A stretch of DNA of 63,460 nt, counting the filler, from Octopus bimaculoides (Eukaryota), in assembly GCF_001194135.2 (NCBI RefSeq). It is 4 parts of 4 records of this genome, joined end to end, with 100 filler letters (N's around TTAATTAATTAA, not from the genome) between each part and the next. Parts side by side here need not be neighbours in the genome. Positions count along the whole stretch, not along the records: positions 1 to 24,082 come from NC_069003.1; 3 more parts are not named here. One strand, written 5' to 3'. This document shows, in pieces, positions 20,567 through 22,729 of the stretch. The notes below the pieces were generated by a model. It was not told the origin of the DNA, did no database searches, and worked only from the letters and a program-made list of their open reading frames with translations. Both the position numbers and the translations under genes were made by a program. How positions within the stretch are numbered: position 1 is the stretch's first letter; each line of letters opens with the position of its first letter.

Positions 20567-22729
20567 ATGGCAGTGGGTGTCACATGGTTTCTTTTCCCCT
20601 TTTTCTGGATGTTTCTAGTGAGTCATTCGAACCCAGAATATAGCAATAGCAGCACTAACTCTAATATGACCATCACCACCACTGCCGCCACCAGCACCGT
20701 CCACACCACCAACACCACCGCCACTCCTAAGGCCACTACCACCACCACTATCAACACCACTTCTTCCACAGCCACCACCAACAACTCTAATATGACCACC
20801 ACCTCTGTCCTCCCAACCATCAACAGCAACATGAACCTCACCGCCAACGACACAACAAGCACCACCACCACCACCNNNNNNNNNNNNNNNNNNNNNNNNN
20901 NNNNNNNNNNNNNNNNNNNNNNNNNNNNNNNNNNNNNNNNNNNNNNNNNNNNNNNNNNNNNNNNCAACTCTAATATGACCACCACCTCTGTCCTCCCAAC
21001 CATCAACAGCAACATGAACCTCACCGCCAACGACACAACAAGCACCACCACCACCACCACCACTATTACCACAACCACCATCCCCAACAACAATAACATC
21101 CATCATACCGTTTTTACCACCACAATCACAGAATGGCAATTAACCATAACTACGGGAAATTCTACAGATGCTGGCACCAATGGTACTATTTACTTGACCC
21201 TGAATGGTACCAAAGGTTTGTGGAACTTGGATATTACGTCGGGCGGCGAAGTATTCCAGAGGAACCAAGTCGACGTGTTCTCTTGGTCGATGCCAGATAT
21301 CGGTGTCTTGGAGCAAGTGGAACTTATCCACGTAGAATTCGTCTTGCATCATTACCTAAACTGGTGGCTTGAATCGATGATGTTACTTGATAAGTCTGCT
21401 GCCGTAGAATATTGGTTTAACTTTAATGGTTACATACCAGAGAACCAGTTCCATTACGGAGAAGTCATCCTTGTCCCGGATTTCGAACTTGAAGTTAATC
21501 TCACTGAATTTACAACTATGGCGACGATGATGTCCACCACAATAACAAAGATGATGAACTTGTCAAACTTAAACTCACTCAGCCCGTCATCTTCCGTTCA
21601 CCAATCAGAAAATTCTATGTTCTCCAATGTTCACGGTTCGGTGAGTCATTTTCTAACCGAAAGTATTCAACATGTCTCTACCACGGATCAGCAATTTGTC
21701 TCCGTTAGCAACTTCGATGATTATCAAACTTCTTCAAGTTATCCGCCAAACCATTTAGATCATAGTGACAACAATAACATCAACACCGCCTTCACAACTC
21801 GTACTATTTCTACGATTTCCAACCAGAACAGCCACAGCATCATTTACGACTATTTATATTCTCTAACCACTTCTTTGCCGTCCTCGGTTTTAGAAACTTC
21901 TCGAAATTTTGTCAGTACTAATATACAAACAACTTCTTTTCCCGATGAATTTCTGTCGACTTCCTCGCCATATTTTCTTACTGAAACACTTTCGAACATT
22001 CTCTCTTCTCAAACAACATCAAAAATAAATTCCAGAAGTCTCCAGCCTTTGTCGACGTTCTCGAGTCATGAATCAAAACTGAACGCGAGTGGAACCTCTC
22101 CAACCGGTTCTTCGGCGATGCTGTTTTCTAATTCGAAAACTCTAAATATTGAAACATCAGAAGAAATAACGACCACAGATTTTGATCCGAACACCAGCCA
22201 AGAACTGTCTCAAACGGAAACCCAGCATTTGTTGACTTCATCCTCGTTTCCAAGGATCTTCTCAATGTCATCTTTTTCATCATTTTCATCTCATCATTCT
22301 TCTTTTGCTTCCGCTACAATTTATTTCTCTTCCCGGGGTGCATTGTCTTTGTTGCCAACCGAACAAATGATGTTATGTGTTTATTCTTCTTGCGGGCAAC
22401 ATTCTGCGCTTTTAAGTTCGTTTTTCAACCAGAACGGTGATAAGCGAGACAGCATTGACCAATCAGTAGTCTTACCCTTGCAGAAAAGACTCATGAATAT
22501 TTCCAAAGAGTTAACAGTCGACAAAAAAGGTCTCAGTAAATACAAAAGAACCAAATCAAGTGCTGTAGATAATCGTTACTCTGCAACAGCCATTGGTTAT
22601 TTGGCGGTGACGGTGATGATTATACCGTTAGCTCTGGTGGTGGCCAGCGATTTGATGAACTACCAAAAGTTTTTCCCCTATCGTAAAGACAGGATTATTC
22701 GCACGGCCCCAAAGCCACCGTCGATCTAA
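20567..22729 (+). CDS. Intronless predicted type-I membrane protein: signal peptide, Thr-rich mucin-like region, PLAT/LH2 domain, Ser/Thr-rich stalk, TM helix, short cytoplasmic tail
   Basis: 720-codon ORF that is mostly non-repetitive. ATG is in good context (aagATGg) and the N-terminus is hydrophobic (MAVGVTWFLFPFFWMFLVSHS). It has a recognisable PLAT motif, many N-x-S/T sequons and a hydrophobic segment (AIGYLAVTVMIIPLALVVAS). It spans one 89-N gap flanked by a 94-bp duplication. Confidence 0.82.
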   Translation: MAVGVTWFLFPFFWMFLVSHSNPEYSNSSTNSNMTITTTAATSTVHTTNTTATPKATTTTTINTTSSTATTNNSNMTTTSVLPTINSNMNLTANDTTSTTTTTXXXXXXXXXXXXXXXXXXXXXXXXXXXXXXNSNMTTTSVLPTINSNMNLTANDTTSTTTTTTTITTTTIPNNNNIHHTVFTTTITEWQLTITTGNSTDAGTNGTIYLTLNGTKGLWNLDITSGGEVFQRNQVDVFSWSMPDIGVLEQVELIHVEFVLHHYLNWWLESMMLLDKSAAVEYWFNFNGYIPENQFHYGEVILVPDFELEVNLTEFTTMATMMSTTITKMMNLSNLNSLSPSSSVHQSENSMFSNVHGSVSHFLTESIQHVSTTDQQFVSVSNFDDYQTSSSYPPNHLDHSDNNNINTAFTTRTISTISNQNSHSIIYDYLYSLTTSLPSSVLETSRNFVSTNIQTTSFPDEFLSTSSPYFLTETLSNILSSQTTSKINSRSLQPLSTFSSHESKLNASGTSPTGSSAMLFSNSKTLNIETSEEITTTDFDPNTSQELSQTETQHLLTSSSFPRIFSMSSFSSFSSHHSSFASATIYFSSRGALSLLPTEQMMLCVYSSCGQHSALLSSFFNQNGDKRDSIDQSVVLPLQKRLMNISKELTVDKKGLSKYKRTKSSAVDNRYSATAIGYLAVTVMIIPLALVVASDLMNYQKFFPYRKDRIIRTAPKPPSI
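21131..21478 (+). other. PLAT/LH2 domain within the CDS
   Basis: WQLTITTGNSTDAGTNGTIYLTLNGTKG...FQRNQVDVFSWSMPDIGVLEQVELIH...WWLESMML...EYWFNFNGYI matches the PLAT pattern Y.V.V.TG...AGT...V.I.L.G..G...FERG..D.F....DLG.L..I.I.H...W.L..V.V...Y.F....W. Confidence 0.8.
22508..22651 (+). other. Juxtamembrane motif plus transmembrane helix within the CDS
   Basis: Basic segment ELTVDKKGLSKYKRTKSSAVDNRYSAT followed by hydrophobic AIGYLAVTVMIIPLALVVAS and then D. Confidence 0.7.

What the first reader, a model, noticed from the sequence alone, without database searches (positions are those of the whole stretch)
20567..22729. Intronless mucin-stalk receptor-like protein with an extracellular PLAT domain
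Seen: signal peptide, Thr-rich region, PLAT, about 340-aa Ser/Thr stalk, one TM helix and a tail of about 25 residues, all in a single exon. Established: animal PLAT domains are usually cytosolic (lipoxygenases, LOXHD1, polycystin-1 loop) or attached to secreted lipases, where they bind lipids or cofactors. Inference: a lone PLAT raised on an O-glycosylated stalk could be a lineage-specific lipid- or surface-sensing receptor or adhesin (skin, sucker or mucus). The loop that is usually HDNSG..P is replaced by His-rich HVEFVLHHYLNWW, suggesting altered ligand or metal binding.
Basis: partly seen in the sequence, partly recalled or inferred. Interest (0 to 1): 0.75.

Follow-up and report, generated by a model that had tools for sequence, protein, structure and literature searches.

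The report
Cephalopod membrane glycoprotein with outward-facing PLAT domain
The reading frame is a real, intron-free gene found only in octopuses and cuttlefish so far; it encodes a single-pass membrane protein that appears to hold a lipid-binding-type (PLAT) domain outside the cell on a long sugar-acceptor stalk, an arrangement not described for this domain, but its function is untested.

Summary
Window 20567-22729 (+) is one ORF. It has an N-terminal hydrophobic signal, a Thr/Asn-rich region, a PLAT domain, a ~290-aa Ser/Thr-rich spacer, one TM helix and a 23-aa tail.

PLAT evidence: Pfam 35.6 bits against a cut-off of 23. The AlphaFold model has pLDDT 92.5 and matches lipoxygenase PLAT domains at TM 0.75-0.80.

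The gap does not break the frame. The 94 nt on each side are identical and in the same codon phase. Orthologues carry one copy of this segment, so the likely protein length is 659 aa (690 aa with two copies).

The same uninterrupted ORF occurs in Octopus vulgaris, O. sinensis, an unidentified octopod and two Acanthosepion cuttlefish. All indels are in frame. dN/dS is 0.2-0.5 in PLAT, signal peptide and TM, and about 0.6-1.2 in the spacer.

The best-conserved part is a juxtamembrane motif, ELTVDKKxLSxYKRxKSSAxDxRxSAxAIG, followed by the TM. The same cassette ends Mytilus proteins with Sushi and Apple-type ectodomains. No Pfam family covers it. This supports an outward-facing PLAT.

The His-rich loop is not conserved, so the metal-binding idea is unsupported. 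Public models are misnamed, mis-spliced or truncated. Function is inferred only.

The parts
20567..22729 (+). Complete intron-free coding sequence (ATG 20567, TAA 22727-22729); 720 codons as written, most likely 659 aa once the gap is resolved
   Evidence: In-frame stop upstream at 20486; start context GAAGATGG. The same ORF is present in O. vulgaris, O. sinensis, an unidentified octopod, A. esculentum and A. pharaonis.
20567..20629 (+). N-terminal hydrophobic signal sequence MAVGVTWFLFPFFWMFLVSHS (predicted cleavage after SHS)
   Evidence: Hydropathy. 76-90% identical among octopods, dN/dS 0.15-0.22. Cuttlefish have a hydrophobic N-terminus too. No SignalP run was possible.
20630..21130 (+). 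Thr/Asn-rich N-terminal region containing the assembly gap; octopod-specific (absent in cuttlefish)
   Evidence: 42% Thr and 16% Asn. dN/dS 0.6-1.1 with several in-frame indels. In cuttlefish PLAT starts at residue 42.
20782..20875 (+). Copy A of the 94-nt sequence flanking the gap
   Evidence: 100% identical to 20965-21058 and in the same codon phase.
20876..20964 (.). Assembly gap (89 N) inside the Thr-rich region
   Evidence: The frame is preserved under all three resolutions. Orthologues carry one copy of the flanking segment.
20965..21058 (+). Copy B of the 94-nt sequence flanking the gap
21131..21493 (+). PLAT/LH2 beta-sandwich domain
   Evidence: Pfam PF01477 E=1.7e-8, 35.6 bits, cut-off 23. 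PDB sequence hits to 5-lipoxygenase and polycystin-1 PLAT. AlphaFold2 pLDDT 92.5, pTM 0.85. Foldseek top hits are lipoxygenase PLAT domains, TM 0.75-0.80, rmsd about 2 A. dN/dS 0.23-0.52.
21329..21367 (+). Divergent loop HVEFVLHHYLNWW replacing the usual HDxxG....W; only H-x-E-F and the core Trp are conserved in the family
   Evidence: Alignments. This is the lowest-confidence block of the model, pLDDT about 70.
21494..22375 (+). Ser/Thr-rich, proline-poor, non-repetitive spacer ('stalk')
   Evidence: Over residues 248-613 (spacer plus juxtamembrane region): 22% S, 12% T, 3% P. No tandem repeats. dN/dS 0.55-1.22. Not alignable between octopus and cuttlefish.
22376..22393 (+). The only two Cys of the mature protein (CVYSSC), conserved in octopods; cuttlefish have two or three Cys at different spacing
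22508..22597 (+). Conserved juxtamembrane motif ELTVDKKGLSKYKRTKSSAVDNRYSATAIG, containing a dibasic K-Y-K-R
   Evidence: Most conserved stretch between octopus and cuttlefish. Also found before the TM of Mytilus edulis Apple/PAN-like and Sushi proteins and other ENA/Logan ORFs, E down to 1.4e-8 in a 5.8-billion-sequence database. No Pfam family.
22589..22657 (+). Single transmembrane helix AIGYLAVTVMIIPLALVVASDLM, ending in a conserved Asp
   Evidence: Kyte-Doolittle mean 2.46. dN/dS 0.18-0.30. Fixed spacing to the motif in all cassette-bearing proteins.
22658..22726 (+). 23-aa basic cytoplasmic tail NYQKFFPYRKDRIIRTAPKPPSI with conserved Y-x-K-F (22661-22672)
20502..20565 (.). (AAAG)n microsatellite directly abutting the start codon, also present in the other octopod loci
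22739..22833 (.). (GAA)n then (AAC)n microsatellites 10 nt after the stop; (GAA)n is also present in the other octopod loci
23120..23125 (+). First AATAAA after the stop, a candidate polyadenylation signal (not verified)
18556..18669 (+). Counterpart of 'exon 2' of the public O. vulgaris model; not a conserved coding exon here
   Evidence: Acceptor AG deleted, a 1-nt insertion shifts the frame and a TGA follows. Identity (88%) is the same as in the flanking non-coding sequence.

Best explanation
This is a genuine gene, restricted to coleoid cephalopods as far as the searches reach, with an intron-free coding sequence. It encodes a type I single-pass membrane glycoprotein.

Proposed pathway. 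A short N-terminal signal sequence sends the chain into the ER. The ectodomain, from outside to membrane, consists of:
- in octopods only, a fast-evolving Thr/Asn-rich glyco-region;
- one divergent PLAT beta-sandwich;
- a ~290-aa Ser/Thr-rich, probably disordered and O-glycosylated spacer.

The protein is anchored by a conserved cassette made of the ELTVDKK...R.SA..IG motif, the TM helix and a terminal Asp. Molluscs also use this cassette under Sushi and Apple ectodomains. A 23-aa basic tail with a Y-x-K-F motif follows.

Likely function (inferred). PLAT acts as a lipid-, membrane- or partner-binding head held away from the membrane, on the cell surface or in the lumen of endo-lysosomal or secretory organelles. 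The tail gives sorting rather than signalling. The conserved dibasic site next to the membrane may allow release of the ectodomain.

Shown here: the gene is real and conserved; PLAT is present; there are two hydrophobic segments; the cassette is shared with extracellular-domain proteins.

Inferred only: signal cleavage, glycosylation, location, ligand and shedding.
For: - ORF and gap analysis.
- The same continuous ORF, starting MAVGVTWF..., occurs in O. vulgaris and in an unidentified octopod. RefSeq O. sinensis XP_036354575.1 is that reading.
- Cuttlefish orthologues are continuous in genomic DNA: A. esculentum short-read contigs (run identified in bioRxiv 10.1101/2025.04.22.649952) and the A. 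pharaonis scaffold.
- Selection: all indels are in frame. dN/dS is 0.23-0.52 in PLAT, 0.15-0.22 in the signal and 0.18-0.30 in the TM.
- PLAT: Pfam above cut-off; PDB sequence hits; AlphaFold pLDDT 92.5; Foldseek to lipoxygenase, lipase and Rab6IP1 PLAT domains.
- Lineage restriction: an exhaustive profile search of 1.84 billion representatives gave only one other close single-domain cluster, cuttlefish at 102 bits. The next best domain scored 45 bits.
- Orientation: the juxtamembrane-TM cassette also terminates Mytilus proteins with Sushi (Pfam 38.7 bits) and PAN-like ectodomains. These domains are extracellular, so whatever lies N-terminal of the cassette faces outward.
- The upstream coding exons of the O. 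vulgaris model, which would remove the signal peptide, are not conserved in the window. The acceptor AG inside the Thr-rich region is absent from the window sequence.
Against: - No transcript data could be examined, so the 5' structure, expression and tissue are unknown.
- No dedicated signal-peptide or topology predictor was available. The octopod n-region has no positive charge. The cuttlefish N-terminal hydrophobic stretch is long enough to be an uncleaved anchor.
- N-glycosylation sequons are not enriched beyond composition: 16 observed against 16.5 expected in the ectodomain; for PLAT P=0.05-0.21.
- The spacer is proline-poor and non-repetitive, unlike classical mucin domains.
- Both sides of the TM are basic, so the positive-inside rule does not decide orientation.
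- The high-confidence AlphaFold model rests on an alignment of PLAT domains and is not independent of the Pfam call. A 3-sequence alignment gave pLDDT 31.
- The public O. vulgaris model, with 3 exons and no signal peptide, may reflect a real alternative transcript.
Confidence: 0.62

Rival explanations
1. Tail-anchored protein with a cytosolic PLAT. Translation starts in upstream exons, as in the public O. vulgaris model CAI9739220.1, and splices into the Thr-rich region, skipping the signal peptide. The single TM lies 23 aa from the C-terminus and would be inserted post-translationally. PLAT and a phosphorylatable Ser-rich linker would then sit in the cytosol, the usual place for animal PLAT domains.
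For: - The O. vulgaris model has exons at L002 10001-10096, 49742-49858 and about 54540-56140, and no signal peptide.
- The TM is close to the C-terminus.
- The segment before the TM is strongly basic (KKGLSKYKRTKSS).
- Sequons are not enriched.
Against: - In the window the exon-2 counterpart has lost its acceptor, carries a +1 frameshift and has a TGA.
- The internal acceptor AG is absent from the window.
- The signal-peptide ATG and hydrophobic N-terminus are conserved under purifying selection in every species, including cuttlefish.
- RefSeq O. sinensis uses the single-ORF reading.
- The same juxtamembrane-TM cassette sits under Sushi and PAN ectodomains in Mytilus.
Confidence: 0.1
2. Real type I membrane glycoprotein, but PLAT is only a structural spacer or relic. 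Under this reading the functional unit is the conserved juxtamembrane-TM cassette plus tail, acting in sorting, shedding or partner binding. The head domain would be interchangeable (PLAT, Sushi or Apple) with no lipid-related role.
For: - The cassette is more conserved than PLAT between octopus and cuttlefish, and it extends to bivalves.
- The PLAT domain has lost several canonical residues: AGTD to AGTN, the HDxxG loop, and the Trp of RWL.
Against: - PLAT is under purifying selection (dN/dS 0.23-0.52).
- It is 49% identical across roughly 270 My by the commonly cited divergence date.
- It keeps a family-specific conserved surface: H-x-E-F, YIPEN, FQR.QVDVF.
Confidence: 0.2
3. Not a functional gene: a chance ORF in low-complexity DNA, a decaying retrocopy, or an artefact of scaffolding across the gap.
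For: - Flanked by microsatellites.
- Contains an assembly gap with duplicated flanks.
- No intron.
- Overall dN/dS against O. vulgaris is 0.76.
- Not represented by any protein of this species in the database.
Against: - An ORF of about 630-660 codons in AT-rich DNA is kept open in four octopod assemblies, and an orthologous ~425-codon ORF in two cuttlefish.
- There are only in-frame indels.
- Domain-wise purifying selection is seen.
- The Pfam domain scores above its cut-off.
- The gap lies in the variable Thr-rich part and does not affect any conserved module.
Confidence: 0.03

Closest known systems
LOXHD1-like multi-PLAT proteins (closest by sequence)
   Same: Their PLAT repeats are the best non-family matches to the domain profile. 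Shared motifs are TG..AGT(D/N), F(E/Q)R(G/N)..D.F and the core Trp.
   Different: They have 5-18 tandem PLAT repeats and, from general knowledge, are cytosolic with no signal peptide or TM. Individual repeats score at most 45 bits, against 102 bits for the cuttlefish orthologue.
Lipoxygenase N-terminal PLAT/C2-like domain (closest by predicted fold)
   Same: Eight-stranded beta-sandwich, TM 0.75-0.80, rmsd about 2 A over about 120 residues. In lipoxygenases the domain docks the enzyme on membranes, often with Ca2+ (established knowledge).
   Different: Only 18-24% identity. Here there is no catalytic domain. The domain is predicted to be extracellular or luminal rather than cytosolic. Conservation of Ca2+ ligands was not assessed.
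Pancreatic and lipoprotein lipase C-terminal PLAT domain
   Same: This is a PLAT domain working outside the cell, where it binds colipase, GPIHBP1 or lipoprotein particles (established knowledge). It is a structural match (ranks 38-49).
   Different: Those proteins are soluble secreted enzymes. Here PLAT is alone, membrane-tethered through a long spacer, and has no hydrolase domain.
Polycystin-1 / PKD1-REJ family
   Same: Membrane proteins that carry a PLAT domain. There is a weak sequence match (E=0.3).
   Different: In polycystins PLAT is in the first cytoplasmic loop of an 11-TM protein with REJ and GPS domains. None of that is present here.
Membrane-tethered sialomucins (e.g. endolyn/CD164, CD43, CD68) - analogy only, from general knowledge
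   Same: Type I topology, Ser/Thr-rich extended ectodomain, and a short tail with a membrane-proximal Y-x-x-hydrophobic sorting motif.
   Different: No sequence similarity. The spacer is proline-poor and non-repetitive. There is no SEA or LAMP domain. Glycosylation is untested.
Mytilus edulis 'Apple domain-containing protein' (P0157) and 'C4b-binding protein alpha chain-like' (P0168)
   Same: They share the juxtamembrane motif ELTVDKK.(T)S.Y.R...SA.D.R.SA..IG, the TM helix and the terminal Asp at fixed spacing.
   Different: Their ectodomains are PAN-like or Sushi instead of PLAT, and their cytoplasmic tails are unrelated. The cassette itself has no Pfam family, and no paper containing the motif string was relevant.

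Membership tests
PLAT/LH2 domain (Pfam PF01477) | Profile score above the curated gathering threshold | tested here: met
   35.6 bits against a cut-off of 23, E=1.7e-8, covering profile positions 2-114 of 117. The cuttlefish orthologue scores 33.8 bits.
PLAT/LH2 domain (Pfam PF01477) | Eight-stranded beta-sandwich fold | tested here: met
   AlphaFold2 pLDDT 92.5, pTM 0.85, with 8-9 strands. Foldseek probability 1.00 to lipoxygenase, lipase and Rab6IP1 PLAT domains. Caveat: the alignment used was built from PLAT domains. It is a prediction, not a solved structure.
PLAT/LH2 domain (Pfam PF01477) | Canonical conserved residues (AGTD loop, F-E-R-G..D.F, H-D-x-x-G....W, R-W-L) | tested here: inconclusive
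   The core Trp and G/T/F/D positions are kept. AGTD is changed to AGTN, HDxxG is replaced by H(V/S)EF plus a 3-4 residue insertion, and RWL is replaced by GYI. This is a divergent member.
Type I single-pass membrane protein | Cleavable N-terminal signal sequence | tested here: inconclusive
   A hydrophobic 14-residue core with small residues at -3 and -1 (S-H-S) is conserved under purifying selection. No SignalP-type predictor and no experiment were available. The cuttlefish N-terminus could be an uncleaved anchor.
Type I single-pass membrane protein | One C-terminal TM helix with the N-terminal side outside | tested here: met
   There is a single 23-residue hydrophobic segment. Orientation is inferred from the same cassette lying under Sushi and PAN ectodomains in Mytilus. 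It is not shown biochemically.
Membrane-bound mucin | Pro/Thr/Ser-rich tandem repeats | tested here: not met
   No tandem repeats between 21494 and 22400. Pro is 3-5%, and S+T is 33-34% in the spacer. Only the octopod N-terminal region reaches 40-52% S+T.
Membrane-bound mucin | Dense O-glycosylation | not testable with these tools
   Needs glycoproteomics or glycosidase shift assays.
Tail-anchored protein (rival) | No N-terminal signal sequence; single TM within about 30 residues of the C-terminus | tested here: not met
   The TM position fits, with 23 aa after it. However, a conserved hydrophobic N-terminus is present in all six loci.
Polycystin-1 family | 11 TM helices, REJ and GPS domains, PLAT in a cytoplasmic loop | tested here: not met
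   Only PLAT was found by Pfam. Apart from the N-terminal signal there is one TM segment.
Processed retrogene | Intron-free copy of an intron-containing parent, poly(A) remnant, target-site duplications | tested here: inconclusive
   The CDS is intron-free in octopods and cuttlefish. No parental paralogue was found. No poly(A) remnant is recognisable, only a (GAA)n tract. If the gene arose by retroposition, that event predates the octopus-cuttlefish split.

The most novel reading that the evidence does not exclude
Coleoid cephalopods may have built a membrane-tethered, outward-facing PLAT 'head' by joining a PLAT domain to a juxtamembrane-TM cassette (ELTVDKK...R.SA..IG, TM, Asp). That cassette is previously undescribed and is found in both cephalopods and a bivalve. 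Elsewhere it anchors Sushi and Apple ectodomains. It may be a shared sorting or shedding module with a conserved dibasic cleavage site. If so, the protein would be the first surface or luminal PLAT receptor for lipids or lipid-coated surfaces, and the cassette would be a new exon-shuffled protein module.
Probability: 0.25. Interest if true: 0.65.

Novelty: new variant of a known kind. Interest (0 to 1): 0.45.

Why it matters
PLAT domains are known as cytosolic membrane-docking modules or as parts of secreted lipases. A lone PLAT displayed on a long spacer by a single-pass anchor is an architecture I could not find described. It is restricted, as far as the searches reach, to octopuses and cuttlefish.

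It is a small, tractable candidate for a lineage-specific lipid- or surface-binding protein.

The analysis also exposes a strongly conserved juxtamembrane-TM cassette shared by cephalopods and a bivalve, with no Pfam family.

It shows that current public models of this gene are misnamed ('hybrid signal transduction histidine kinase L-like'), mis-spliced (O. vulgaris) or truncated (A. pharaonis). This hides the signal peptide or the PLAT domain from proteome-wide screens.

None of this touches a long-standing open question, and the function is unknown.

Tried and rejected
- A word-index search with the PLAT segment alone returned one candidate and no hit, although orthologues exist. I treat it as a tool miss, and it cost one search.
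- AlphaFold2 with only the three octopod sequences failed (pLDDT 31.5). It succeeded only with a 59-sequence PLAT alignment.
- N-glycosylation sequon enrichment, tried as a test of topology, was not significant and was dropped as evidence.
- The His-rich loop as a metal site was rejected. The extra histidines are not conserved in O. vulgaris or cuttlefish.
- Classical mucin repeats: none were found.
- A tandem duplication of period 183 nt across the gap is implausible, because it would duplicate the start of PLAT. The alternatives that remain are an overlap merge or adjacent 93-nt units.
- Other genes in the window: nine further ORFs gave no Pfam hit, and there were no Rfam families or tRNAs. 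The Thr/Ser-rich open frames at 215-573 and 1365-2017 look like low-complexity DNA.
- Literature: no paper links PLAT to cephalopods in this sense. The only paper containing the motif string LTVDKK is unrelated. The accession search identified only run ERR12945500, as A. esculentum.
- The species behind the ENA cassette hits could not be determined, because the records are ERZ analysis contigs.
- The species of the window and of run SRR11869394 remain unidentified. The window is co-linear with O. vulgaris chromosome OX597836.1 at dS of about 0.12.
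Full report
**1. Observation and the gap**

Window 20567-22729 (+) is a single open reading frame of 720 codons as written. It has an in-frame stop upstream at 20486 and an A(-3)/G(+4) context at the ATG.

The assembly gap (89 N, 20876-20964) lies in the Thr-rich N-terminal part. The 94 bases before it (20782-20875) are 100% identical to the 94 bases after it (20965-21058). Both copies begin in phase 0 of the ORF. The reading frame is therefore continuous under three readings:
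- the N-run is taken as written;
- the two contig ends are an unmerged overlap (minus 183 nt = 61 codons, giving 659 aa);
- two perfect 93-nt (31-codon) units lie side by side (690 aa).

Three octopod orthologues have one copy of this segment, so 659 aa is the most parsimonious length. The real copy number is unknown. The gap touches none of the conserved modules.

**2. Anatomy (merged numbering)**

- Residues 1-21 are hydrophobic (MAVGVTWFLFPFFWMFLVSHS).
- Residues 22-126 are 42% Thr and 16% Asn.
- Residues ~128-247 are a PLAT domain.
- Residues 248-613 are a spacer plus juxtamembrane region with 34% Ser+Thr but only 3% Pro. Tandem Repeats Finder reports no repeats there.
- Residues 543 and 548 are the only cysteines.
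- Residues 587-616 form a charged motif, ELTVDKKGLSKYKRTKSSAVDNRYSATAIG.
- Residues 614-636 are the only strong internal hydrophobic segment.
- The last 23 residues are basic and begin NYQKFF.

No other ORF in the window has a Pfam match, and no RNA family or tRNA was found.

**3. It is a real, conserved gene with an intron-free CDS**

A protein search found O. vulgaris CAI9739220.1 (82% identity) and a Logan contig from run SRR11869394 (71%). Reading the DNA shows that both loci carry the same continuous ORF from MAV(G/Y)VTWFLFPF... to the stop. RefSeq O. sinensis XP_036354575.1 (634 aa) is exactly that reading.

The window is co-linear with O. vulgaris chromosome OX597836.1 over about 34 kb. 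Non-coding identity is 75-88%, against 87% in the ORF.

An exhaustive profile search of 1.84 billion representative proteins with the PLAT alignment returned 418 hits. Nearly all are multi-PLAT LOXHD1-like proteins. Only one other cluster is close as a single domain: P0046, 422 aa, 102 bits. The next best domain anywhere scores 45 bits.

P0046 comes from genomic short reads of the cuttlefish Acanthosepion esculentum. Run ERR12945500 is identified in bioRxiv 10.1101/2025.04.22.649952. The A. pharaonis scaffold CAHIKZ030000286.1 carries the same ORF without interruption.

The cuttlefish protein has the same plan: hydrophobic N-terminus, PLAT at residues 42-160, Ser/Thr spacer, motif, TM and tail. 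It lacks the N-terminal Thr-rich region.

Among the three octopods compared, all indels are multiples of three. Nei-Gojobori dN/dS values are:

| Region | dN/dS |
|---|---|
| Signal | 0.15-0.22 |
| PLAT | 0.23-0.52 |
| TM | 0.18-0.30 |
| Spacer | 0.55-1.22 |
| Thr-rich region | 0.59-1.08 |

Octopus and cuttlefish align only in PLAT (49% identity) and in the C-terminal ~110 residues (39% identity). The spacer is not alignable.

**4. PLAT**

- Pfam PF01477 scores 35.6 bits against a gathering cut-off of 23.
- A profile search of PDB sequences finds the PLAT domains of 5-lipoxygenase (E=0.011) and polycystin-1 (E=0.3).
- AlphaFold2 with three sequences failed (pLDDT 31.5).
- With a 59-sequence alignment that adds PLAT domains from the exhaustive search, it gave pLDDT 92.5 and pTM 0.85, an eight- to nine-strand sandwich.
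- Foldseek matches lipoxygenase PLAT domains at TM 0.75-0.80 and rmsd about 2 A, then lipase and Rab6IP1 PLAT domains.

This confirms consistency with the fold. It is not independent of the alignment.

The domain is divergent: AGTD becomes AGTN, the HDxxG loop becomes H(V/S)EF plus an insertion, and the RWL tryptophan is lost. The loop reads HVEFDVHLYQSWW in O. vulgaris and HSEFSSTNTYLKW in cuttlefish. The metal-binding idea therefore has no comparative support.

**5. The juxtamembrane-TM cassette and topology**

The segment S(K/R)ELTVDKKxLSxYKRxKSSAxDxRxSAxAIG before the TM is the best-conserved stretch between octopus and cuttlefish.

A profile search with the C-terminal region found the same motif in other proteins. 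In each it has the same spacing to a TM helix that ends in Asp. These proteins include:
- a Mytilus edulis protein annotated 'Apple domain-containing' (E=1.4e-8; PAN_1 itself is below threshold);
- a Mytilus edulis protein with Sushi repeats (38.7 bits);
- several unannotated ORFs from ENA and Logan assemblies.

Several of these ORF calls begin just before the motif. That is what one would expect if the cassette is a separate exon there (inference). No Pfam family covers it, and the motif string is absent from relevant literature.

Sushi and PAN/Apple domains are extracellular (established knowledge). The cassette's N-terminal side is therefore outside, which places PLAT outside or in an organelle lumen. 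Together with the conserved hydrophobic N-terminus, this is the main support for type I topology.

Sequon counts do not add evidence: 16 observed against 16.5 expected.

**6. The conflicting public model**

The O. vulgaris model uses two upstream exons (44 kb and 4.7 kb away) spliced to an AG inside the Thr-rich region. This gives a protein without a signal peptide. In the window the exon-2 counterpart (18556-18669) lacks the acceptor AG, has a 1-nt insertion and then a TGA. It is no better conserved than its flanks. The internal acceptor AG is also absent.

The upstream coding exons are therefore not a conserved part of the gene. An O. vulgaris-specific or non-coding 5' exon cannot be excluded without RNA data.

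The A. pharaonis model (155 aa) covers only the C-terminus.

**7. Mechanism**

Best-supported reading: a type I membrane glycoprotein that presents a PLAT head on a flexible, probably O-glycosylated spacer. It is anchored by a cassette shared across molluscs. The short tail has a conserved Y-x-K-F, about six residues after the hydrophobic core, that resembles Y-x-x-hydrophobic sorting signals. The conserved dibasic K-Y-K-R next to the membrane could be a convertase or sheddase site.

By analogy with PLAT domains in lipases, lipoxygenases and bacterial alpha-toxin (established knowledge), the head most likely binds a lipid surface or a protein partner.

These functional steps are inference. Only the gene's reality, its architecture, its conservation pattern and the shared cassette are shown here.

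**8. Comparison and novelty**

The domain is a divergent PLAT member. The protein is not a polycystin, lipoxygenase, lipase or LOXHD1 homologue in architecture. It is not a classical mucin, because it has no PTS repeats.

The gene is already present in public annotation, but under a meaningless name and with wrong or partial models. I found no description of a membrane-tethered extracellular PLAT protein or of the cassette.

I rate it a new variant of a known kind, of moderate interest.

Noticed in passing
window 22508-22657; P0157, P0168, P0156-P0172: A juxtamembrane motif (ELTVDKK.(T)S.Y.R...SA.D.R.SA..IG), a TM helix and a terminal Asp form a fixed cassette. It is shared by cephalopod PLAT proteins and by Mytilus proteins with Sushi or Apple-type ectodomains. 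No Pfam family covers it, and no relevant paper contains the motif string.
   Followed up: partly
L002 10001-56143 (O. vulgaris OX597836.1); L009 5191-6468 (A. pharaonis): Public models of the orthologues are faulty. The O. vulgaris model CAI9739220.1 replaces the signal peptide and Thr-rich region with two non-conserved upstream exons. The A. pharaonis model is cut to the last 155 aa. The octopus models are named 'hybrid signal transduction histidine kinase L-like', probably from a low-complexity match.
   Followed up: yes
window 20388-20565 and 22739-22833; L001 ends; L008 around 1544 and 3448: The ORF is bracketed by microsatellites: (GATA)n and (AAAG)n up to 1 nt before the ATG, and (GAA)n then (AAC)n from 10 nt after the stop. 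(AAAG)n and (GAA)n are present at the same places in O. vulgaris, O. sinensis and the unidentified octopod, but not in cuttlefish.
   Followed up: partly
window 17664-19348: This non-coding block is 87% identical to O. vulgaris, against 75-85% in most neighbouring blocks. It contains the counterpart of the O. vulgaris 'exon 2' with an intact GT donor but no usable acceptor or frame. It could be a conserved regulatory or non-coding-exon element.
   Followed up: partly
window 2205-2485, 5888-6256, 15065-15278, 23634-23854; also 2843-2967 and 23244-23385: Two families of short interspersed repeats occur in both orientations, with many copies across the 66-kb O. vulgaris locus (70-89% identity). 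They give no Rfam or tRNA match.
   Followed up: no
window 215-573, 1365-2017, 14545-14641: Further Thr/Ser/Pro-rich open frames and a (GGT)n tract resemble the Thr-rich part of the gene in composition. They have no start-to-stop gene structure or domain hit and look like low-complexity DNA.
   Followed up: partly
window 1-24082: The piece is heavily gapped. It has 15 N-runs of 10-861 nt (about 5.7 kb in total), mostly next to AT- or CA-rich microsatellites.
   Followed up: yes
L001 (Logan SRR11869394): A third octopod orthologue has dS of about 0.32 from the window species. Its 2,024-nt contig ends in the same flanking microsatellites. The species was not identified.
   Followed up: no
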